NCBI RefSeq assembly: GCF_026571515.1
Contig: NW_026865396.1
Span: 310,001-374,000 of the forward strand
DNA from: Ruditapes philippinarum
Taxonomy: Eukaryota
DNA: 64,000 bases
Direction of reading: 5' to 3'
Position 1 is the first letter of the stretch; the number at the start of each line of letters is the position of its first letter. The notes beneath the pieces are model-generated. The model was not told the DNA's origin, ran no database searches, and saw only the letters and a program-made list of their open reading frames with translations. Both the position numbers and the translations under genes were made by a program. Below, one piece after another: positions 48,084 through 61,903 of the stretch.

Positions 48084-48147
48084 TCACTTTGGTGGCGTGT
48101 GCAAATTATGATGATGCTGATTCCGAAGATCGCCGCCAGGTGGCACT
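48084..48147 (-). CDS. Possible terminal exon of the homeobox gene ([20 protein letters not shown])
   Basis: tttcttgcag acceptor; phase matches the donor at 48555; GC-richer than flanks. Confidence 0.5.
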
Positions 48148-51100
48148 CTGCAAGAAACATAAATTTTTAAGAATGAGTGTCTTACATGATTGAAATGAGC
48201 TATACCAGGTACAATTGATATGGAAAATATATTTCACTATGAATTATAGATTACCACAAATAGAAAATGAAAATAAAAATAAATTAAAATAAATTAAACA
48301 TCAACAAACAAATAATACATAATATAGAAATAATACAATGCAGAGCTTATATGTCGCGTTGATTGCTATATGATGGAGATCAAAGATTTTTTCTACCATG
48401 CGGTAATTCCATTGGTTTGCATTGTTCTATGAATTAAAACATAAATTGAATAGGCTGAATTTAATCATTAGCAAAACAATGATTGTCTATACATTAGAAC
48501 ACACAACAAAGTTCTTTTTCTAAAAATAGAACAATAAACAAAAACATCCACTAACCTATCAAAAAGTCCAGAGTATCTAAGAGCGTGAGAATACCAAAAA
48601 TCTTGCATGGAATTCTCGTGAAGCGCCATACAACCAAGAAATGGCGGCATTACCGGCGGCGCGCACGTGGCGTTCTAACGTAATCGCCTGTTCAAATCTG
48701 CCGCGACACTGTCATTTATCGGCATGTGATTGTAGTAACGTAAAGCAGCATTGATTCCGGTCTTACGTAACTCCTTTCGCCATTTTGCTCTTCTGTTTTG
48801 GAACCACACCTTTAACAATATTGAAAGAGAAATGCATTCATAAAAGCTATATTTTACTTTTCGGATCGGAATTGCAATAGGAGAGGTGAATCAATATCAA
48901 TATCGGAACTATTACAGCTACTGATTCTATGTTTCAGTTTAAACGTATTTTATTACCAATAAAGACGAGTTAGGTAAAATTATTCACCTTTGGTGTATTA
49001 TATATTGAAAGAAAGACCCCTAAACTTTCTTAAACCCCTTTTTATCAGTGTTTGACCCCTAGTGGATAGGACATTTCAATTTACTCTAATAAACTGCATG
49101 AAGCCAAAGTATAGTTAAAATTATTTTTGTCAGAATTACGTTACTTCATTTTTAAAACCTAAATTTCGTATAGAAATATCACTAATGTTTTTTTTTCCTC
49201 TGTACCCTGGCTTCACGAATGTTTTACTGTATTTGCTGCATTTAGCTTAAGAATTCTTTATATTTTGTATTTATTTTGTTTAGTACAATACCTTATTTTT
49301 AAGACAAATTTTGTAAAGAAATATCAATAATGTTTTTACCTGTACCCTTGGCCTCACAAATAGTGTACTGTATTAAGGTAAAATACTTTTATTACATTGT
49401 TTAGTACAATAATATATGTTTAAAGCTAAATTATCAAAGAAGTAAATTTACCTGTACCCTGGCCTCACACAGGTTAATTTTTGCTGCTAACTCCTCCCTC
49501 ACAAATATGTCAGGATAATATATCCGCGCAAATAATTCTTCTAGTGCTGAAAGCTGGCATGGTGTAAATGACGTCCTCTGACGTCGCTGAAATAAACAAA
49601 ATTATTTAGATATTATTTTGTTTCTATCAGCTTCAAAGAAAAGTAGATTTTTGTCAAACAGAAAACATGCTATTTTCTTATACACTTCGAAATGAAATAT
49701 TGAGAAATATGATGAAATTAAATGCGTATTTTTGTTTTCCGTATTTTTACTATAAAAAATTATTTTTCACTGAAGTGAAACATATTTTCCGTATTTTCAC
49801 TGGTGTCTTGCCGGACTACTTTCTTCTAAATTAAGTCAATATTCAAAATTTAAGTACAAGTCTTTCAAATTGTTGAATCAAAAACAGAGAAAAAATGTAT
49901 ATAATAAACAGAAAATTCAAGTTTTTTTTTCTTGTGGAATGAAAATTATCATATTTCACTCGTGGCTATTGCCACTCATGAAGTATTTATTTTCATATCA
50001 CTTGATGAAAATAAATCCCGTATTTATAAAAAATAAACTTGAATACCTTCCAAAACTAATTCAAGGAAATAATATGACAATGTAATAATGATAAAAAAGA
50101 AAAAGAAACTAACTCGTCATTTCAAAAGGATTTATTTTTGTTTTGTTTTATTTTGCAGTATATCTTTAAATGAAATTGGTTTTGTGATTTTCTTTCTAAT
50201 TTATATATTTGCAGCTGTTTGTTCTCCTTGTGAAACAAGCTTACAAATTTTTTTCTAGAATGTCAATAGTTGAACTTTTTCATGTCTTTTAACTAACACA
50301 GAATTATTGTACTTGCAATTTCTGTATGTTACGAAATACTGTACCGATATTCGGTACATGTCTGTGAAGTACGCGGGCTAACGGGCTAGCAGTCTAGCGG
50401 GCTAACAGTATGAACTGAGCGGGCTAGCAGTCTAGCGGGCTAACAGTGTGAACTGGGCGGGCTAGCAGTATAGCGGGCTAACAGTGTGAACTGGGCGGGC
50501 TGGCGGGCCAGCGGGCTAAAATCTAAAACTTTATTATTGAACATAAAAATGTTATGATACATTACCTGACAGTGTGAAGTGGGCGGCTAACAGTGTAGCG
50601 GGCTAGCAGTGTGAACTGGGCGGGGCTGGCGGGCCAGCGGGATAAAATCTAAAACTTATTGATTGAACATGAAAACGTTATGATACATTACCTGGCAGTG
50701 TGAAGTGGGCGGGCTAGCAGTGTAGCGGGCTAGCAGTGTGAACTTGGCGGGCTGGCGGGCCAGCGGGCTAAAATCTAAAACTTTATTGATTGAACATTAA
50801 AAGCTCACGATACATTTCCTAGCAGTGTGAATTGGACCGGCTGACAGTGTAGCGGGCTAGCAGTGTGAACTGGGCGGGCTGGCGGGCCAACGGGCTAAAA
50901 TCTAAAACTTTATTGATTGATCATAAAAACATTATGATACATTACCTGGTAGTGTGAAGTGAGCGGGCTAACAGTGTAGCGGGCTAGCACTGTGAACTGG
51001 GCGGGCTGGCGGGCCAGCGGCTAAAATTTAAAAACTTTATTGATTCAACATTAAACTCATGATACATTTCCTAGCAGTGTGAATTGGACGGGCTGACAGT

Positions 51101-54100
51101 GTAGCGGGATAGCAGTGTGAACTGGGCGGGCTGGCGGGCCAGCGGGCTAAAATCTTAAACTTTATTGATTCAACATGAAAACGTTATGATACATTACCTG
51201 GCAGTGTGAAGTGGCGGGCTAACTGTGTAGCGGGCTAGCAGTGTGAACTTGGCGGCTGGCGGCCAGCGGGCTAAAATCTAAAACTTTATTGATTGAACAT
51301 TAAAACCTCATGATACATTTCCTAGCAGTGTGAATTGGACGGGCTGACAGTGTAGCGGGCTAGCAGTGTGAACTGGGCGGCTGGCGGACCAACGGGCTAA
51401 AAAGTAAAACTTTATTGATTGAACATAAAAATGTTATGATACATTACCTGGCAGTGTGAAGTGGGCGGCTAACAGTGTACGGGATAGCAGTGTGAACTGG
51501 GCGGGCTGGCGGGCCAGCGGGCTAAAATCTAAAAACTTTATTGATTCACATAAAAATGTTATGATACATTACTGGCAGTGTGAAGTGGGCAGGTTAACAG
51601 TGTAGCGCGGCTAGCAGTGTGAACTGGGCGGGCTGGCGGGCCAGCGGGCTAAAATCTAAAACTTTATTGATTGAACATGAAAACGTTATGATACATTACC
51701 TGGCAGTGTGAAGTGGGCGGGCTAGCAGTGTGAACTTGGCGGCCAGCGGGATAAAATCTAAAACTTATTGATTGAACATTAAAACCTCATGATACATTTC
51801 CTAGCAGTATGAATTGGACGGGCTGACAGTGTAGCGGCTAGCAGTGTGAACTGGGCGGGCTGGCGACCAACGGGCTAAAATCTTAAAACTTTATTGATTG
51901 AACATAAAAAACATTATGATACATTACCCTGGCAGTGTGAAGTGAGCGGGCTACCAGTGTAGCGGGCTAGCAGTGTGAACTGGGCCGGCTGGCTGGCCAG
52001 CGGGCTAAAATCTAAAACTTTATTGATTCAACATTAAAACCTCATGATACATTTCCTAGCAGTGTGAATTGGACGGGATGACAGTGTAGCGTGCTAGCAG
52101 TGTGAACTGGGCGGGCTGGCGGGCCAGCGGGCTAAAATCTAAAACTTTATTTATTCAACATTAAAAACCTCATGATACATTTCCTACCAGTGTGAATTGG
52201 ACGGGCTGACAGTGTAGCGGGCTAGCAGTGTGAACTGGGCGGACTGGCGGGCCAGCGGGCTAAAATCTAAAACTTTATTGATTGAACATTAAAACCTCAT
52301 GATACATTTCCTAGCAGTGTGAATTGGACGGGCTGACAGTGTAGCGGGCTAGCAGTGTGAACATGACGGGCTAACAGTGTAGCGGGCTAGCAGTGTGAAC
52401 TGGCGGCTTTCGGCCAGCGGGCTAAAATCTAAAACTTTATTGATTCAACATAAAACCTCATGATACATTTCCTAGCATGTGAATTGGACGGGGCCTGACA
52501 AGTGTAGCGGGCTAACAGTGTGAACTGGGCGGGGCTGGCGGGCCAGCGGCTAAATCTAAACTTTATTGATTTAACATTAAAACCTCATGGTATATTACCT
52601 TGCAGTGTGAAGTGGGCGGGCTAACAGTGTAAAGGGCTAGCAGTGTGATCTGGGCGGCTGGCGGGCCAACGGGCTAAAATCAAAACTTTATTGATTGAAC
52701 ATACAAACGTTATGATACATTACCTGGCAGTTTGAAAGTGGGCGGGCTAACAGTGTAGCGGACTAGCAGTGTGAACTGGGCAAAGCTGGCGGGACAGCGG
52801 GCTTAACTTTAATACTTAATTGTATCAACATAAAAACCTCATGATATATATTTCTTAGAATGTGACACCAATAGACAGTGAAAGGGAGGCTGGCGTTTCA
52901 TGATCATTAACTGAAGTTTGCGTTTTTTCATCATGGCAAAGAAACAAGCACAAGTTATGACTTACAAAAGGACTCTAGTGCAGGGCAGAGATTGTTCTGC
53001 GGGTCATCCTGTCAAATATTCCGTATTTAAAATTTAAACCATGGCTCAACCAACACAGGGGATGGTATGGAACTGGCATCTTTTGTTTAATAGCAAATCT
53101 AGACATTTTAAAACTCCCTCCCGGCAGCTGAAACAAACTACAGAGCAGTAAAACTTAATTTAAGTGCTTGACCGAGTATACTCAGCCTTTTGCGAACATC
53201 GGTAGACATAAAACTTAATTAAGTGCTTTGACGAGTATACTCAGCCTTTGCGAACATCGTAGATCACAATCAGTCGGTGCGCATTCGCGCCGTCTGCCAA
53301 GAATCTACACTGTTACTGCCCAACCACTGAGTATGATTCTAGTGTCCAAGCACCGAACATGTGGAACCTGATCAACCGGCTCTTGTTGGCGCCTATTGAT
53401 ATAACTCGAGAACGGTGACCCAAATTCTTTTTGTTTAAAATGTTTCTGTTATCATATTTTAACAAAATGCCAAGTTTAAAGAAATTCTATTGAACAGTTT
53501 AATTTTGCCTATATGCCTATATGAAAATCCCGAAAACTCATTAAGGGTTAAAAATAAAATATCAACCATAAGAGTTTTTGTCGTCTTTTTAATTAAAAAG
53601 TTTCTGCGACGATAGCAACAGTTTTGCTTCTCTGTGATCAAAATTCTGATTTTCATTTTTTCAATACGGGCGTTGACAAGAAAATACAAGAAATGCGGGT
53701 TTGTTATCGTATTATATTTTCAATTTGATAGAATTATGCTGCGCTTCGCGTGGCTTGCAATAAGTTCCATAAAATTTAAAAAAATAAACAATAACCTATT
53801 ACTTATAACAATCTCAAATATTATGCAAAAGTTATTTTTCAAAAAAATTAAGAAATGTCAAGGAACAGTAATATATATATAAAGGTTAATAAACCTTTCG
53901 AAAATTTCGAAATTTTTTCACGAGCTTATGCATTCTTACTGACAACATGCAACATAAAAATATTTCTGAATACATACACAATGCCAAAAGTTTATGATAC
54001 AATACATTAGTTTCAAACGAATGAACAAACATGAAAATCAATACATGATAAAACGTTAGATGAAATTTTTCAAAAATATAGACCACAAAATGAATTATCA

Positions 54101-57100
54101 TAGTTTAATGCGACTATCTGTAGAAACATTGTGTTTATAAGTAATAAAACTATTAACTATAACAATTAGGTCATTATTAATTTTTTTTTCAATATATTAC
54201 TTATTACAATTATACGAACAACAAATAAGACAGACAGAAATCACTTTAAATTTTATAAATACGACCACGGATTTATATATATATAAAATCCGTGATACGA
54301 CATAATAATTATATGTTTGTTAAAATGTACATTACATAATGTACATGTATATATTTTAACTATGATGCATAGCTTTATACATACTTGAAAAAATTATGAT
54401 TTTTCATACATCATATTTGACTACATTTTAAAATTTAACCAATATATAACACATAGAAGAAAATTCATTAAGGTACTAAAAAAAAATTATATCAACAGAA
54501 ATTGAGAAATATATCAATTGAAATTTTTATAATAAATATTTATCATTTGTAATATTGTCATCTTGAAAAACATCTTATCAAGTATTTCTCGACCTCGCCT
54601 ATAATATCACCAACGGCAATTTGACACCTTCATTGTTTTCCCTTATTTATCTAACTGGTCAGCAGTTTTCGATTATCCTTGTCAGCAGTTTCCTATACAT
54701 TCTATATCGTCAGCTATTTCGTCAGCAGTTTAGTATCGCCCACGGTCTCCGGTGCCTAACATGCACTGGCAAAACACGTCGAGTGTGGATACACCCTTTG
54801 GTTTCCCTACCCACCACAGCTCACCTCCTGATATTGTTAATTAACAAATGTACTATATAAACCGAATAGTCATTGACTGGTGATATATATTCAATCTGTT
54901 TAAAAGTAATAACATAATCCAATTTTCTGCTTTGAACGGACAAAGAAATAGAGAGAACTCTAGATAACTTCTCGTTGTCATGGCAACACCACATATCAAA
55001 ATTTTGTTTTAGTTTTGTTCATGGACAGTAGTGAAATGATAGTTGTTGGTTCATCCGAACATAATTATGAAAAAAAATGTGACAAATATACCGACAATGA
55101 AATATCTCTATCAACATACTGCTGTCATTGATTCCCAGTTTTGCGGCATTTTCAGCAATTTCTGAATCTATATCACTAGGATATAATCTGCCGTAAATCA
55201 GTAGGCCTAATGTTGAGATAAGATCCTAAAATTGTGGGATTTTTTACGAAATGCAACTCATTCCAAAAATGCAAACATCATTTTTGATCATCTGGACGGA
55301 TTGTTAACCTCTCCTCCATTTTGTACGATTCAGACCCCAGGTGCCATTTCGGACAACTTTCAGGCTCGGGCGGACACCAGTTCTTGTATAACCACCCACA
55401 TTCCGCAAGCTAGTTGGTTAACGTCCTTACATGAAAATACATGTAATTACTATGGTAGCCTCGAACTCAGAGCTGCAATAAGACATAGTGAGGAAACTCT
55501 GATGGTACATCTGTCGGTATAAGTATGCCGTCGCTTTGTGGTTTTTCACAATTTGACATTCGTAATATAGTGCAGGAAGTACAAGAAGATGGCCCATTTC
55601 AGAAGCATACCTGGATCTTTTATGTGTCAGGTGTAATGCACCGATACACGGACCTCGCTTTAAAGTCCCATCCGAAAGACTGTTGGTAATGTTAGGGAGG
55701 AGCGGGGGGTCGAACTCAAACCCTTGATTATATATACAAATGTATGTATATTAACCACCAGACCACAGATCCGCTCCTTAATAAATCGCCAGATTCCTAG
55801 ATGTCCTATGTTTATGGACAAGCTTCTGTCATTGCACGAAGTAAACACCTATGTATGTACCTCTGGTGCATCTCTGCTTCACACCAAGAGGTTCTACATT
55901 TGACTGCCTACTACTAAAATCTTTATGTTGCCAAGTTGTTTTTTTTCATGTTTCATTAAATCGTTTTTCTGTATACCATGCATATTAATATCAAAATACG
56001 GATTTAAAACCCATTTTAGTGTACTCTCAAGGATCGTGGTATATATATGAAACAATCATTGTTGCCTCCGCCCGATTCACACTGCAAACAATCCATCAAA
56101 AACGCTTTGTGTTAAAATAATTAGGTATGGAATTTAGACCACTAGACTTGCTAGCACATTTACAAACTGTTAGCTCACCGAGCTTATACAGCTAGGAAAT
56201 GTATAGGTAAGGTTTTTATGTTGATTCAATTAAGTTTTAAAGTTTAGCCCGCTGGCCCGACAGCCCGCCCAGTTCACACTGCTAGCCCGCCACACTGTTA
56301 GCCCGTCCAATTCACACTGCGAGGAAATGTATCATGAGGTTTTAATATTGAATCAATAAAGTTTTAGATTTGAGCCCGTTGGCCCGCCAGCCCGCCCAGT
56401 TCACACTGCTAGCCTGCTACACTGTCAGCCCGTCCAATTCACACTGCTAGGAAATGTATCATGAGGTTTTAATATTGAATCAATAAAGTTTTAGATTTTA
56501 GCCCGCTGGCCCGCCAGCCCGCCCAGTTCACACTGCCAGGTAATGTATCATAACGTTTTTATGTTCAATCAATAAAGTTTTAGATTTTAGCCCGTTGGCC
56601 CGCCAGCCCGCCAAGTTCACTCTGCTAGCCCTTTACACTGTTAGCCCGCCCACTTCACACTGCCAGGTAATGTATCATGAGGTTTTAATGTTGAATCAAT
56701 AAAGTTTTAGATTTTAGCCCGCTGGGTCGCCAGCCCGCCCAGTTCACACTGCTAGCCCGCTACACTGTTAGCCCGCCCACTTCACACTGCCAGGTAATGT
56801 ATCATAACATTTTTATGTTCAATCAATAAAGTTTTAGATTTTAACCCGTTGGCCCGCCAGCCCGCCCAGTTCACACTGCTAGCCCGCTACACTGTCAGCC
56901 CGTCCAATTCACACTGCTAGGAAATGTATCATGAGGTTTTAATGTTCAATCAATAAAGTTTTAGATTTTAGCCCGCCAGCCCGCCCAGTTCACACTGCTA
57001 GCCCGCTACACTGTCAGCCCGTCCAATTCACACTGCTAGGAAAATGTATCATGAGGTTTTAATGTTCAATCAATAAAGTTTTAGATTTTAGCCCGCCAGC

Positions 57101-60100
57101 CCGCCCAGTTCACACTGCTAGCCCGCTACACTGTCAGCCCGTCCAATTCACACTGCTAGGAAATGTATCATGAGGTTTTAATGTTGAATCAATAAAGTTT
57201 TAGATTTTAGACCGCTGGCCCGCCAGGCGCCAAGTTAACACTGCTAGCCCGCTACACTGCTAGCCCGTCCACTTCACACTGCCAGGTAATGTATCATAAC
57301 GTTTTCATGTTCAATCAATAAAGTTTTAGATTTTTAGCCCGCTGGCCGCCAGCCCGCCCAGTTCACACTGCTAACCCGCTACACTGTCAGCCCGTCCAAT
57401 TCACACTGCTAAGAAATGTATCATGAGGTTTTAATGTTCAATCAATAAAGTTTTAGATTTTAGCCCGCTGGCCCGCCAGCCCGCCCAGTTCACACTGCTA
57501 GCCCGCTACACTGTTAGCCCGCTCACTTCACACTGCCAGGTAATGTATCATAACGTGTTTATGATCAATCAATAAAGTTTAAGATTTTAGCCCGTTGCCC
57601 CGCCAGCCCGCCCAGTTCACACTGCTAGCCCGCTACACTGTCAGCCCGTCCAATTCACACTGCTAGGAAATGTTTCATTAGGTTTTAATGTTCAATCAAT
57701 AAAGTTTTAGATTTTATCCCGCTGGCCCGCCAGCCCGCCCAGTTCACACTGCTATCCCGCTAAACTGTTAGCCCGCCCACTTAACACAGCTAGGAAATGT
57801 ATCATAAAGTATTCATGTTCATTCAGTAAAGTTTTAAAGTTTAGCCCGCTGGCCCACCAGCCCGCCCAGTTCACACTGATATCCCGCTACGCTGTTGGCT
57901 CGCCCACTTAACACTTCCAGGTAATGTATCATAACGTTTTCATGTTGAATCAAATAAAGTTTTAGATTTTAGCCTGCTGGCCGCCAGCCCGCCCAGTTCA
58001 CACTGCTAGCCCGCTACACTTTTAGCCCGCCCACTTCACACTGCCAGGTACTGTATCATAACATTTTTATGTTCAATAAATAAAGTTTTAGATTTTAGCC
58101 TGCTGGCCCGCCAGCCCGCCCAGTTCACACTGTTAGCCCGCTATACTGCTAGCCCGCCCAGTTCACACTGTTAGCCCGCTAGACTGCTTGCCCGCCCAGT
58201 TCACACTATTAGCCCGCTAGACTGCTAGCCCGCTCAGTTCATACTGTTAGCCCGCTAGACTGCTAGCCCGTTAGCCCGCGTACTTCACGGACATCCGATA
58301 TTGTACCTATTTTCTTCTTCTAAATAAAAATTATTGCAAAACTTAATTTATTATAAGATCAGGTTAAGCGAATTTGCAAAAATATTTTGTTGCAAAAAAA
58401 CCTAAACATTAAATGGTTAATTCATTGAAAAATAAGTAATATGGTATCCAGCTATTGTGAATGTTACATATTCACTCTCGAGTGAAACTAGGAGCCTGAA
58501 AATACACACAGTTGGTTACCAACGGTAGTATTAGGTTGCAAAAAATACATTTGTAAATTGATAAATAAATAAATAAATAAATAAAATTAAATTGTTAATT
58601 ANNNNNNNNNNNNNNNNNNNNNNNNNNNNNNNNNNNNNNNNNNNNNNNNNNNNNNNNNNNNNNNNNNNNNNNNNNNNNNNNNNNNNNNNNNNNNNNNNNN
58701 NNNNNNNNNNNNNNNNNNNNNNNNNNNNNNNNNNNNNNNNNNNNNNNNNNNNNNNNNNNNNNNNNNNNNNNNNNNNNNNNNNNNNNNNNNNNNNNNNNNN
58801 NNNNNNNNNNNNNNNNNNNNNNNNNNNNNNNNNNNNNNNNNNNNNNNNNTTTAATACTCTTAACGTTATGTTACATACACTTCAAGTGTTTAGTAGACAA
58901 AAAATTTTAGAAAAAAAATCTTACGTATAAATTACGAAAGTCAAATGAAATTTTTATTCTTCCGTGCGAAAATTAAAATCATGGATGTTTATTTTTTTGT
59001 TTCTTTATTTTTATACCAATATGTACTATCAGAGCTTAAAATCAGACAAAAATAAAAGAAGTCAACTACATTTTCAAAATCAGGTACTTTATTAAGTATA
59101 CCACCAAATGAAAAAGTCGTTTGTAAGTACATCAAAGTGAATTGGTCTACAAAAGGCACCTTTTCAACTTTCATAAGTTGGATATTCTTGTAAAATATTT
59201 TTGTCGAAACAAAACACAAGAACAACAGTTACAATGCAAATTATATATATTGAATCATTTTACAAATACAAAACAAATGTATACGTTAAAGATAATAATA
59301 CTTTTGTTATTTTCATTTTTAATAGATTTAATTTAACACAAACATTCTTCATCCAAAATATTAAACATTATACTTGAATAACAATTTGAAAGAGAGACAA
59401 TTTTACAAATATCGTTACAGAGCCGTTATTTTATTTGAAAAAAGCGACTAAGATTGACAAAAAAAATGGTCTAGTTTTTGTAAATAAATGAATAAAATGA
59501 ATTTATTTGTGTTCAAACATCTGATCAAATCGAACAGAAATCAGTCGTCTTACACCCCATGATCGCACTAAATGGAGGCATTAGGTAGAATGCGACACTT
59601 TGCGGACTATCGAGAAGCATCTTGAAAATTGGCATTGCGTGTAAAAGGTTGACCATATTTCAGATTAGATTTTTTTGTTATTTAGATATTGGCGCCTATT
59701 GATATCGATGCAACTTTGCAGGAAAGCAGATTCTTCTAGAATAAAATAAGTCATCTTATTTTCATCTTGTTCCAGTTATAGGGTCACGTCCATGTCGCCC
59801 GACCTCTAAACACGGCGGTCGGCATTGTTTTTGACACAGTCAGGAAACCGTCATATAATATAATAATAATATCTTTATTTAAAGATAACTATGGAGAAAA
59901 TATTGATATTTGAAAATATTGATAATTCTACACAGTCTCTTTATAAATATAAAATAAACATGTTTTGACTTCAAAGTAAATATATATGTTTTAAAATCTA
60001 CACATTATAGGTGGTCACACTATGAATATTATCGTCATTAAAAAAACTGGCTTTTTTAAAAGAAAAGATCAACTTTTCTTGACATGTAATAGGGAAAGCA

Positions 60101-60969: not shown

Positions 60970-61903
60970 GCAGGCAAATAACAACAGCAACACATATTTT
61001 ATACCTGCCGCGAATGATTTGTTATAAATTGTAAGTCCAACTTGGCGACAGAGCTGTCTGATTCAAGTTTACCATGCTCTCTACTCTCGTGTTTCTGTCC
61101 TTTAGAATCTGTTGCTAATAGAAAAATAATACATGTTACAATTTAGCGTCAAACTTGACAATGTTTTTTTTATATATCTAACGTCTGATATATCTAACGT
61201 CTTTTGCGTTCATGACGTCATACCAGGATTATTCTATTTTTTCCAAACGTGTGATGTACTGCTATTACGTTTTTTTCTGTACGAAATCTGCTGTGGTCAT
61301 AGTATTATTTTTACAATAGCTTTGGTCTTAGACCAGGTTTACATTTTCTGATCATGGTCATGTAAATACATCATTAGATAAAGAAAGAGACGCTTGTTTT
61401 TGGTTGAGTCCATTATGTTTTGTTTAGGGGTGAAATGTGAAACCTAAATCTATTTAATTATACTCAGATTTGTCAAATATGTTTGTAATAAACTGTTTTG
61501 CAGGCGACAACACTTAGCCAAAAGTGTAAAAAATTAAAAAGGTAACACGCGGGGTGAATTTGTTGAAATTTACGTAACGTCAAATGTAGATATGTAGAGG
61601 TCCCCCCACCGTCCCTCCATCGCACCTACCCTTCTCCAAGACTCCCAGATCTCCGAGATTTTCGATAAAAGAATTCTTATACTAAACTCTTATTCAAGTA
61701 CATGTCATGAAGAATTATGTTTGACAGCAGGCATTATACTTTTATTTCAGTTTTGTTTCTGATTTATATAACTCAATTCATTCCCTTGTTTTGCTGATCG
61801 ATTGACTGCTTTTGTCATGCTAACATACACCTTAAAATAAAGTAACACAACAATTTGTAATAACCATAACATTCAGTATTTGTAACTTACTATTAAGCAG
61901 CAT
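48084..61903 (-). CDS. PRD-class (paired-like, Q50) homeobox gene, DRGX-like helix 2-3; in-frame TAG in exon 4
   Basis: Proposed exons 61891-61903 (tentative), 61005-61108, 49452-49586, 48556-48809, 48084-48147; phases compatible. Homeodomain [46 protein letters not shown]|[12 protein letters not shown], with the PRD-typical intron between residues 46 and 47. Confidence 0.8.
48556..48809 (-). CDS. Homeobox exon: recognition helix plus C-terminal region (TAG at 48675-48677)
   Basis: [83 protein letters not shown], then AG|GTTAGT. Confidence 0.85.
49452..49586 (-). CDS. Homeobox exon, homeodomain residues 2-46
   Basis: [45 protein letters not shown]; tttcag acceptor, CAG|GTAAAT donor; 135 nt. 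Confidence 0.93.
49698..50050 (+). repeat. Dispersed repeat family C, copy 2
   Basis: Matches 16497-16812. Confidence 0.75.
50358..52860 (+). repeat. Tandem array (left arm): 3 x 38 bp, then ~19 x ~127 bp
   Basis: AAAATCTAAAACTTTATTG recurs every ~126-127 nt; internal GCGGGCTA(G/A)CAGTGT subrepeats. Confidence 0.95.
54266..54294. mobile_element. 29-bp palindrome with 7-bp target duplication (ATACGAC)
   Basis: ATACGAC|CACGGATTTATATATATATAAAATCCGTG|ATACGAC. Confidence 0.78.
55325..55800 (-). mobile_element. Two degenerate SINE remnants inside the foldback loop
   Basis: 55325-55480 resembles the SINE body above. 55600-55795 carries ggatcttttatgtg..gcaccgatacacgg..catccgaaagac and an antisense B-box-like gggtcgaactc, suggesting a second SINE family. 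Confidence 0.5.
56190..58294 (-). repeat. Tandem array (right arm, inverted): ~16 x ~127 bp plus 4 x 38 bp
   Basis: CAATAAAGTTTTAGATTTT recurs every ~127 nt; reverse complement of the left array. Confidence 0.95.
58602..58849. other. Assembly gap (248 N)
   Basis: Run of N, preceded by a (TAAA)n tract. Confidence 1.
61005..61108 (-). CDS. Probable upstream exon of the homeobox gene ([34 protein letters not shown])
   Basis: Acceptor ttttctattagcaacag, donor CAG|GTATAA, phase 0. Splicing to 49586 rebuilds the N-terminal arm SRQ-RRQRT. Confidence 0.65.

What the first reader, a model, noticed from the sequence alone, without database searches (positions are those of the whole stretch)
50344..58302. 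7.9-kb foldback element with modular, satellite-built inverted arms inside a homeobox intron
Seen: two opposite-orientation arrays mirror each other at both ends. Each has a unique terminus (ATGTC[T/C]GTGAAGTACGC), 38-bp repeats sharing diagnostic variants in the same order (outermost gtatgaactga, innermost cagtata; 3 copies left, 4 right), 16-19 units of ~127 bp, and a shared diverged innermost unit (ACTTAATTG). CCGATATT flanks both sides; on the left it is offset by 6 nt (CGGTAC), so the exact target duplication is ambiguous. No transposase ORF in the 3.3-kb loop. Known: Drosophila FB, Galileo and Tetris and sea-urchin TU elements have tandem repeats inside long TIRs and can seed satellite DNA. 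Inference: a possibly undescribed non-autonomous foldback family acting as a satellite dispersal vehicle. If transcribed within this intron it would form ~2 kb of dsRNA.
Basis: partly seen in the sequence, partly recalled or inferred. Interest (0 to 1): 0.78.

Follow-up and report, generated by a model that had tools for sequence, protein, structure and literature searches.

The report
Foldback transposon with satellite-repeat arms
This is a real 7.9-kb "foldback" jumping gene with no enzyme gene of its own, one of about 130 copies in this probably molluscan genome, sitting in the first intron of a homeobox gene; it is a new family of an already known kind of element.

Summary
The element runs from 50358 to 58294 (7,937 bp). 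Its two inverted arms of ~127-bp tandem units align over 2,062 columns at 92.7% identity. Both ends carry the same terminus and 38-bp subterminal repeats, and a 3.3-kb loop without a gene lies between the arms.

It is a transposon, not an artefact:
- The terminus occurs 257 times in the 1.41-Gb assembly, against 0 for a reversed control.
- 15 of 20 sampled termini have an inverted mate within 10 kb.
- 8 of those 15 pairs carry perfect 9-bp target duplications.
- Two related loci (C2434, C6189) hold the uninterrupted site. This shows that the odd left junction is target CCGATATT plus a 6-nt filler, CGGTAC.

All 18 copies inspected lack a transposase, and no autonomous partner was found. The 9-bp duplication points to a Mutator-like (FB / Rehavkus / Tetris-type) transposase. 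That is an inference, at about 55%.

The 127-bp unit shows no sign of arrays outside foldback arms, so seeding of free satellites is not shown. The element lies in intron 1 of a paired-like homeobox paralogue, not in the intron that splits the homeobox. RNA data do not show specific transcription.

The scan had already found a different foldback family (71-bp satellite) in this genome. Verdict: a new member of a known kind, of moderate interest.

The parts
50344..50351 (+). Left copy of the target duplication (CCGATATT)
   Evidence: The empty sites in C2434 and C6189 carry this stretch once, between the two flanks.
50352..50357 (+). 6-nt filler CGGTAC between the duplication and the terminus. 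It is absent from the empty site and is the reverse complement of GTACCG at 50341-50346.
50358..50374 (+). Left terminus, 17 nt. It has a private C>T change at 50363 relative to the family terminus ATGTCCGTGAAGTACGC.
   Evidence: sharp boundary in 30 of 30 loci; reads from other copies show C at 50363.
50382..50519 (+). Left subterminal 38-bp repeats (3.6 copies), built of 16-nt and 22-nt modules that each start with CGGGCT
50444..52846 (+). Left arm: array of ~127-bp units (19 unit matches). Each unit has a GC-rich half with CGGGCT cores and an AT-rich half.
   Evidence: CGGGCT occurs 55 times in the arm and 0 times in the loop and flanks.
52847..56189 (.). Loop, ~3.34 kb, non-coding. It is shared at 91-95% identity with 5 of 15 other sampled copies and holds a private 59-bp tandem duplication at 53149-53263.
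56190..58170 (-). Right arm: the same ~127-bp units in reverse orientation (17 unit matches)
   Evidence: AGCCCG 56 times; 92.7% identity to the left arm over 2,062 aligned columns.
58095..58270 (-). Right subterminal 38-bp repeats (4.6 copies)
58278..58294 (-). Right terminus, identical to the family's 17-mer
58295..58303 (+). Right copy of the target duplication (CCGATATTG; the first 8 nt match the left copy)
61005..61130 (-). Host gene: exon-1-like match (63% identity over 43 aa to P0013 residues 4-46, ending in ...FITNHSRQ)
   Evidence: tblastn E = 7e-11.
49452..49586 (-). Host gene: homeobox exon (RRQRTSF...ARVQ) with AG acceptor and GT donor. The foldback lies 772 bp upstream of its acceptor.
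48555..48806 (-). Host gene: next exon ([10 protein letters not shown]...) with an in-frame TAG where the relative P0013 has Q

Best explanation
A non-autonomous class II (cut-and-paste) foldback transposon.

Shown:
- The family has about 130 copies.
- Its ends are sharply defined (ATGTCCGTGAAGTACGC and its complement).
- Insertion duplicates 9 bp of target.
- This copy interrupted a site that is intact in two related loci.
- None of the 18 copies inspected encodes a protein.

Inferred:
- A transposase supplied in trans recognises the termini and the many CGGGCT-core motifs of the arms (about 55 per arm here). It excises the element and reinserts it at a 9-bp staggered cut.
- The 9-bp duplication makes a Mutator-like (MULE) enzyme the most likely source, as for Drosophila FB, Tetris, Tm1 and Rehavkus. 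I put this sub-claim at about 0.55.
- Arm length varies from 5 to 35 unit matches per arm among the copies inspected, probably through unequal exchange or slippage.
- The window's copy is old and probably immobile. Its units are 92% identical to the family consensus, the lowest but one of the 32 arms measured; the others range from 91.9% to 97.5%. It also has a mutated left terminus and a filler at the left junction.
- Its only visible effect is to lengthen intron 1 of a paired-like homeobox paralogue, which itself carries an in-frame stop.
For: Family and ends:
- The 25-nt terminus occurs 133 times forward and 124 times reverse, against a control of 0 and 0. The 17-nt terminus with up to 1 mismatch occurs 136 and 128 times, against 1 and 0.
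- In 30 of 30 loci, similarity stops exactly at ATGTCC... and the sequence upstream is unrelated.

Pairing and duplications:
- 15 of 20 fetched stretches hold a forward and a reverse terminus.
- 4 of the other 5 still show both arms, and the fifth is cut by its contig's end.
- 8 of 15 pairs have perfect 9-bp duplications. Chance is about 4e-6 each.

Empty site:
- The left flank ends and the right flank begins on the same 8 bp in C2434. C6189 is likewise uninterrupted.
- The alignment shows ...TGTACCGATATTGTACC... uninterrupted.

Non-autonomy:
- The longest open frame in 16 elements is 137 aa.
- The two longest listed elements (11.5 and 11.3 kb) have only longer arms and a known loop variant.
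- 10 loop ORFs reach no Pfam cut-off.

MULE inference:
- The Tetris paper makes the same argument from 8-10-bp duplications (PMC4079207, passages).
- Tm1 combines foldback-like arms, a 9-bp duplication and a Phantom MULE transposase (PMC3169594, passages).
- Rehavkus has a 9-bp duplication and minisatellites (PMC6446971, table). In Tribolium it is described as a foldback element with satellite repeats in its inverted termini (bioRxiv 10.1101/2024.12.02.626372, passages).
- MULE domains with open frames up to 1,164 aa exist in this genome.
Against: - No transposase was linked to the family. None of the contigs with the 38 PF10551 matches appears among the contigs of the 40 scored loop matches. 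None of the 15 MULE-bearing contigs numbered up to C9786 appears among the exact termini listed, which shows only the first 100 of 257.
- Only about 7 termini lack the usual arm continuation, so an autonomous copy with the same ends is rare or absent in this assembly.
- 7 of 15 pairs, and the window's own copy, lack a clean 9-bp duplication.
- Rehavkus inverted repeats are given as 26-400 bp and its hosts as arthropods and annelids. The arms here are about 2 kb, and the host seems to be a mollusc.
- A 9-bp duplication is not unique to MULEs. From recall, Merlin makes 8-9 bp.
Confidence: 0.8

Rival explanations
1. The same foldback transposon, but moved by a transposase that is not Mutator-like. 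Candidates are a Merlin-type enzyme or a still unclassified one. Alternatively, the family's own enzyme has been lost from this genome.
For: No MULE gene is linked to the family. The foldback structure has arisen in several superfamilies (PMC4079207 and PMC3169594, passages). From recall, 8-9-bp duplications are also made by Merlin.
Against: 9 bp is the typical MULE value. According to the Tetris paper, most foldback elements with known enzymes are Mutator-like. Merlin is rare in bivalves: 3 curated elements against 39 MULE (PMC10294476, passages).
Confidence: 0.2
2. A Galileo-like member of the P superfamily, as the reader's comparison and neighbouring notes on P-type footprints might suggest.
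For: Long inverted arms with internal tandem repeats resemble Galileo (PMC3573991 and PMC3688188, listing and passages). Another note of the scan reports P-related transposases in this genome (unchecked).
Against: Galileo is flanked by 7-bp duplications. Here all 8 perfect duplications are 9 bp. No THAP or P-type ORF lies in any loop.
Confidence: 0.03
3. Not a mobile element: a local inverted duplication of a satellite array, or an assembly artefact that joins two arrays head to head.
For: Short-read contigs break inside the arms. No listed piece spans the stretch, so this copy's contiguity was not confirmed by reads.
Against: The same architecture, with the same ends, is found in 19 of 20 sampled loci. 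There are 8 perfect target duplications. Empty sites exist at related loci. Forward and reverse unit counts are equal genome-wide.
Confidence: 0.01
4. A Helitron/Helentron-type carrier of tandem repeats, the kind known from bivalves (pearl/CvA, DTC84, Cg170 carriers).
For: These are the satellite-carrying elements so far described in bivalves (PMC7492417, PMC11136912 and PMC12628747, passages or abstracts).
Against: In those elements the repeats lie in the centre, between conserved ends with subterminal hairpins. Here the repeats form 2-kb terminal inverted arms and insertion duplicates 9 bp. From recall, rolling-circle elements make no such duplication.
Confidence: 0.01

Closest known systems
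Drosophila Foldback (FB) and Tetris elements
   Same: Long inverted arms built of tandem repeats behind a short unique terminus. Arm and loop length vary between copies. Most or all copies are non-coding. Duplications are 8-10 bp in Tetris and, from recall, 9 bp in FB. As with Tetris, no autonomous copy was found.
   Different: The sequence is unrelated as far as I can tell; no database comparison was possible. The unit is 127 bp, built from CGGGCT modules plus an AT-rich half. There are about 130 structurally complete copies against three for Tetris. There is no sign that the unit has expanded into free satellite arrays, whereas the Tetris repeats did. The host is probably a mollusc.
Rehavkus (MULE-related) elements of insects and annelids
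   Same: A 9-bp duplication and subterminal minisatellites. In Tribolium they are described as foldback transposons with up to 50 satellite monomers in the inverted termini.
   Different: Rehavkus is defined by a transposase with a PHD finger, and none is linked here. The inverted repeats are tabulated as 26-400 bp. The hosts named are Arthropoda and Annelida only.
Tm1 of root-knot nematodes
   Same: Foldback-like composite arms of tandem motifs. Mostly 9-bp duplications (45 of 53 have 8-10 bp). Most copies are non-coding.
   Different: Tm1 repeats are about 14 bp, its elements are 1-2.6 kb, and it has asymmetric 7-bp end motifs. One Tm1 copy encodes a Phantom-type MULE transposase; no such copy was found here.
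Galileo (P superfamily)
   Same: Long arms with internal tandem repeats that hold extra transposase-binding sites. Chimeric copies lack matching duplications, which may explain the 7 of 15 pairs without duplications here.
   Different: Galileo has a 7-bp duplication and a THAP-bearing P-type transposase.

Membership tests
Foldback-type transposons (structural class) | Long terminal inverted repeats made of tandem repeats behind a short unique end | tested here: met
Foldback-type transposons (structural class) | Mobility: many dispersed copies, target duplications, empty sites | tested here: met
   257 termini. 8 of 15 pairs have perfect 9-bp duplications. Empty sites in C2434 and C6189.
Foldback-type transposons (structural class) | Variable arm and loop length; most copies non-coding | tested here: met
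   5-35 unit matches per arm and loops of 0-5.4 kb. No frame above 137 aa.
Mutator-like (MULE) superfamily, including FB-NOF, Phantom and Rehavkus | Target duplication of about 9 bp (8-11) | tested here: met
   Reference values.
Mutator-like (MULE) superfamily, including FB-NOF, Phantom and Rehavkus | An autonomous copy encodes a MULE DDE transposase between the same ends | tested here: inconclusive
   None in the 18 copies inspected. PF10551 matches exist in the genome, but none shares a contig with the listed termini or loop matches. Only part of the copies could be listed or fetched.
Rehavkus | Transposase with a PHD finger | not tested
   No transposase is linked to the family.
Rehavkus | Minisatellite or tandem repeats in the subterminal regions | tested here: met
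   Feature as described.
P superfamily (Galileo) | 7-bp target duplication | tested here: not met
   9 bp in 8 of 8 perfect cases.
Helitron/Helentron tandem-repeat carriers of bivalves | Central repeats between conserved ends; no terminal inverted repeats; no target duplication | tested here: not met
   Here the repeats are the terminal inverted arms, and a 9-bp duplication is present. Description; the absence of a duplication is recalled.

The most novel reading that the evidence does not exclude
This is the first Mutator/Rehavkus-type foldback family described in a mollusc. Its arms are arrays of about 55 binding motifs (CGGGCT core), selected because more sites raise transposition. It has spread to about 130 loci with no autonomous copy bearing the same ends left in the assembly, which would mean cross-mobilisation by a structurally different MULE (for example one of the PHD/FLYWCH elements that other notes report in this genome). 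Copies without matching duplications (7 of 15) would then mark ectopic recombination between elements, that is, foldback-driven rearrangements in a bivalve genome.
Probability: 0.35. Interest if true: 0.5.

Novelty: new member of a known kind. Interest (0 to 1): 0.35.

Why it matters
In bivalves, the satellite-like repeats so far tied to mobile elements ride on Helitron/Helentron carriers. A cut-and-paste foldback family with 2-kb satellite arms adds a second route. It also gives about 130 dated, structurally complete copies. With these one can study how arm arrays grow and shrink, whether arms are homogenised, and whether such hairpin-prone inserts are tolerated in introns.

For annotation, it explains an 11.4-kb first intron in a paired-like homeobox paralogue and separates that paralogue from two related loci that lack the insert. 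It does not change what is known about how such elements work.

Tried and rejected
- **Autonomous partner.** I inspected 16 paired elements and the centres of the two longest listed pairs. All are non-coding. A PF10551 search gave 38 matches, but their DNA could not be cut out. No match shares a contig with the listed termini or loop matches. The 17-mer count (264) barely exceeds the 25-mer count (257), so few ends have a different interior.
- **Coding remnants in the loops.** 10 frames of 85-137 aa reached no Pfam cut-off; the best E-value was 0.041.
- **Loop flip-flop.** The loop of L039 matches the window's loop in reverse. I rejected this as evidence of inversion. The arms are symmetric, so it only reflects the orientation in which the element was read.
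- **Reads.** No listed contig bridges the left junction and no empty-allele read was shown.
  - At 50363, all of X5's depth and all but 10.6 of 11,251.8 depth units in X8 carry the family's C. The 10.6 could be this copy in X8, but that is too weak to use.
  - RNA run X21 covers the arms at 57-105 in both orientations, against 0.06-0.38 on the unique flank, a ratio of about 290.
  - The DNA runs give about 1,500 for the same ratio, so DNA carry-over or background explains the RNA signal. X23 has 0 on the arms.
- **CpG decay.** CpG sites changed 1.7-1.9 times as often as other sites. The effect is modest and I did not pursue it.
- **Literature.** Searches found no foldback element of a mollusc. 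In the bivalve papers opened, 'foldback' either is absent or occurs only where Tetris is cited. Supplementary tables were closed, and Repbase and Dfam were not available, so the family may be catalogued there.
- **Earlier notes of the scan.** Another foldback family (71-bp unit) was reported in this genome. No note on this family was found by words.
- **Spliced gene model.** The exons were compared one by one. The joined step was left out.


Full report
**1. What is there**

Between 50358 and 58294 the window holds a 7,937-bp element with two inverted arms.
- The repeat finder returns 520 inverted pairs between the two ends. The longest are 419 nt at 89% and 405 nt at 92% complementarity.
- Tandem Repeats Finder gives a 127-bp array at 50444-52846 (18.9 copies) and its mirror at 56191-58170.
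- It also gives 38-bp subterminal repeats at 50382-50519 (3.6 copies) and 58095-58270 (4.6 copies).
- The arms are GC-rich (0.44-0.48) with GC skew of opposite sign. The flanks are AT-rich.
- Read directly, both ends start with the same 17 nt, with one difference at 50363. They are followed by the same order of 38-bp variants, and both innermost units carry ACTTAATTG.
- A global alignment of the left arm with the reverse complement of the right arm gives 92.7% identity over 2,062 columns.
- The motif CGGGCT occurs 55 times in the left arm, and its complement 56 times in the right arm. It does not occur in the loop or in 2.5 kb of either flank.
- The 3.34-kb loop has no frame of 110 aa or more.

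Only the outer coordinates include 14 and 8 nt of flank.

**2. It is a family of mobile elements**

*Copy number and ends*
- The window's contig belongs to a 1.41-Gb assembly of 15,874 contigs.
- The 25-nt terminus with up to 2 mismatches occurs 133 times forward and 124 times reverse. A reversed control gives 0 and 0.
- In 30 of 30 loci returned for the end (one of them the window itself), similarity starts exactly at ATGTCC. The sequence upstream is unrelated.

*Pairing*
- Of 20 stretches of up to 10 kb fetched inward from a terminus, 15 contain a forward and a reverse terminus.
- Of the other five, four still show unit blocks in both orientations. One is cut by the end of its contig.
- From the exact termini listed, I count 31 pairs on the same contig, spaced 2.2-11.5 kb. 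The window's 7.9 kb is typical.

*Target duplications*
- Eight of the 15 pairs are flanked by a perfect 9-bp direct repeat with no common sequence. Seven are not, with 3-9 mismatches in 9.
- My pairing took the first forward and the last reverse terminus of each stretch, and some stretches hold adjacent or nested copies (L037, L047, L048). The fraction is therefore a lower bound.
- Chimeric copies without matching duplications are known from Galileo (PMC3573991, passages).

**3. The odd junction of this copy, resolved**

This copy has CCGATATT on both sides, but on the left it is separated from the terminus by CGGTAC.
- Searching the genome with the unique flanks found two related loci.
- In C2434 the left flank ends at 52466 and the right flank begins at 52459, an 8-bp overlap. 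C6189 is likewise continuous.
- The fetched 201-base stretches align as ...TGTACCGATATTGTACC... without the element.
- So the element inserted at CCGATATT(G). The six letters CGGTAC are extra. They are the reverse complement of GTACCG a few bases upstream, so the left flank now reads as a small palindrome.

These loci belong to a tandem family of paired-like homeobox genes. Whether they are paralogues or very divergent haplotypes of this locus I cannot tell. The flank identities are 95-96% and 88-94%, with an 81% stretch. Either way they are empty sites.

**4. Anatomy of the family**

- Arms range from 5 to 35 unit matches and loops from 0 to 5.4 kb.
- The window's loop is shared over about 3 kb at 91-95% identity by 5 of 15 other copies.
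- Seven copies share only its first ~0.5-1.1 kb and then carry a second, longer variant. One shares 223 nt, and two have almost no loop.
- The two longest listed pairs (11.5 and 11.3 kb) simply have longer arms and the second loop variant.
- No element has an open frame above 137 aa. Ten loop frames reach no Pfam cut-off.
- From 458 full units, the window's units are 92% identical to the family consensus. This is the lowest but one of the 32 arms measured; the others range from 91.9% to 97.5%.
- Together with the C>T change in the terminus (a CpG site) and the filler, this marks an old copy that is probably no longer mobile.

**5. Is it a vehicle for a satellite?**

- A 28-nt probe from the unit matches 1,167 forward and 1,165 reverse places with up to 3 mismatches. 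The control gives 0.
- That is 9.1 matches per terminus. The 32 sampled arms hold 12.1 each.
- The units in the assembly are thus fully accounted for by foldback arms, and the equal strand counts fit paired arms.
- In two DNA runs, the depth of the arms relative to the unique flank is about 1,500. That does not call for hidden large arrays either, although word depth is a poor copy-number measure.

The element disperses its repeats, but I see no free satellite seeded by it. This differs from Tetris and from one Tribolium Rehavkus repeat.

**6. Which transposase**

- The 9-bp duplication excludes a Galileo-type P element, which makes 7 bp.
- From recall, it also excludes most other superfamilies.
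- It fits Mutator-like enzymes, the argument already made for Tetris and Tm1.
- Rehavkus elements share the 9-bp duplication and the subterminal repeats.

I could not close the link:
- PF10551 matches exist in the genome, in open frames of up to 1,164 aa.
- None lies on a contig that appears among the listed exact termini or among the 40 scored matches of the loop's conserved part.
- Other notes of the scan mention intact FLYWCH and PHD-FLYWCH MULEs in this genome. These are unchecked leads.

I rate the MULE assignment at about 0.55.

**7. Host gene and expression**

The homeobox gene is on the minus strand.
- One exon, with AG and GT splice signals, runs from 49586 to 49452 (RRQRTSF...ARVQ). 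The next starts near 48806 (VWFQNRR...).
- A 196-aa relative found with the first of these exons (P0013) also matches 61130-61005 with its first 46 residues and 48149-48087 with its last.
- The foldback therefore lies in intron 1, which is 11.4 kb long. The corresponding intron in C6189 is about 4.9 kb.
- The exon at 48806-48555 has an in-frame TAG where P0013 has Q, so this paralogue may be a pseudogene.
- I compared the exons one by one and did not join them.

The RNA reads do not show transcription of this copy. One run has family-wide coverage of the arms that is no more enriched than in DNA, and another has none.

**8. Taxon and novelty**

- The run labels are coded. Small shares of the stretch occur in RNA runs labelled 'mollusc metagenome', and another agent's note calls the genome a clam (unchecked).
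- In the paper library I found foldback elements with satellite arms in Drosophila, Tribolium, nematodes and plants. I found none in molluscs.
- A bivalve transposon survey does not use the word 'foldback', and it removed tandem-repeat-rich consensus sequences from its libraries (PMC10294476, passages).
- Supplements, Repbase and Dfam could not be checked.

**Verdict:** a well-supported new family of a known kind of element. The mechanism is inferred by analogy and the autonomous partner is unknown.

Noticed in passing
window 48087-49586 and 61005-61130 (minus strand); also G000 C13883:379640, C2434:3492-51455 and C6189:24057-45736: A tandem family of paired-like homeobox genes spreads over at least three contigs. 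The window's copy has an in-frame TAG, and several other copies carry stops. The best hits in the protein library include proteins with 4-8 homeodomains.
   Followed up: partly
window 49758-50100: Another very high-copy repeat lies in the same intron, just left of the foldback. Word depth reaches 803,010 and 222,900 in the two DNA runs. It is covered by RNA in both RNA runs and has many internal joints.
   Followed up: no
window 53149-53263: A 59-bp tandem duplication in the loop is private to this copy. In other copies the two query parts overlap by about 60 nt.
   Followed up: partly
window 53358-53557 and 54558-54757: Two short stretches of the loop have word depth 20-60 times that of the rest of the loop in the DNA runs. 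They are probably other small high-copy repeats nested in the loop.
   Followed up: no
L037 (right end), L047, L048: Foldback copies abut or nest in one another. The right terminus of L037 is followed directly by another unit array, and L048 holds the end of one copy 3 bp from the arm of the next.
   Followed up: no
window 50341-50357: The left flank reads GTACCG-ATATT-CGGTAC, a small palindrome created by the 6-nt filler. A common repair footprint is conceivable.
   Followed up: no
window 58602-58849: An N run of 248 bases lies 307 bp to the right of the element, in the same intron. It was left as it is.
   Followed up: no
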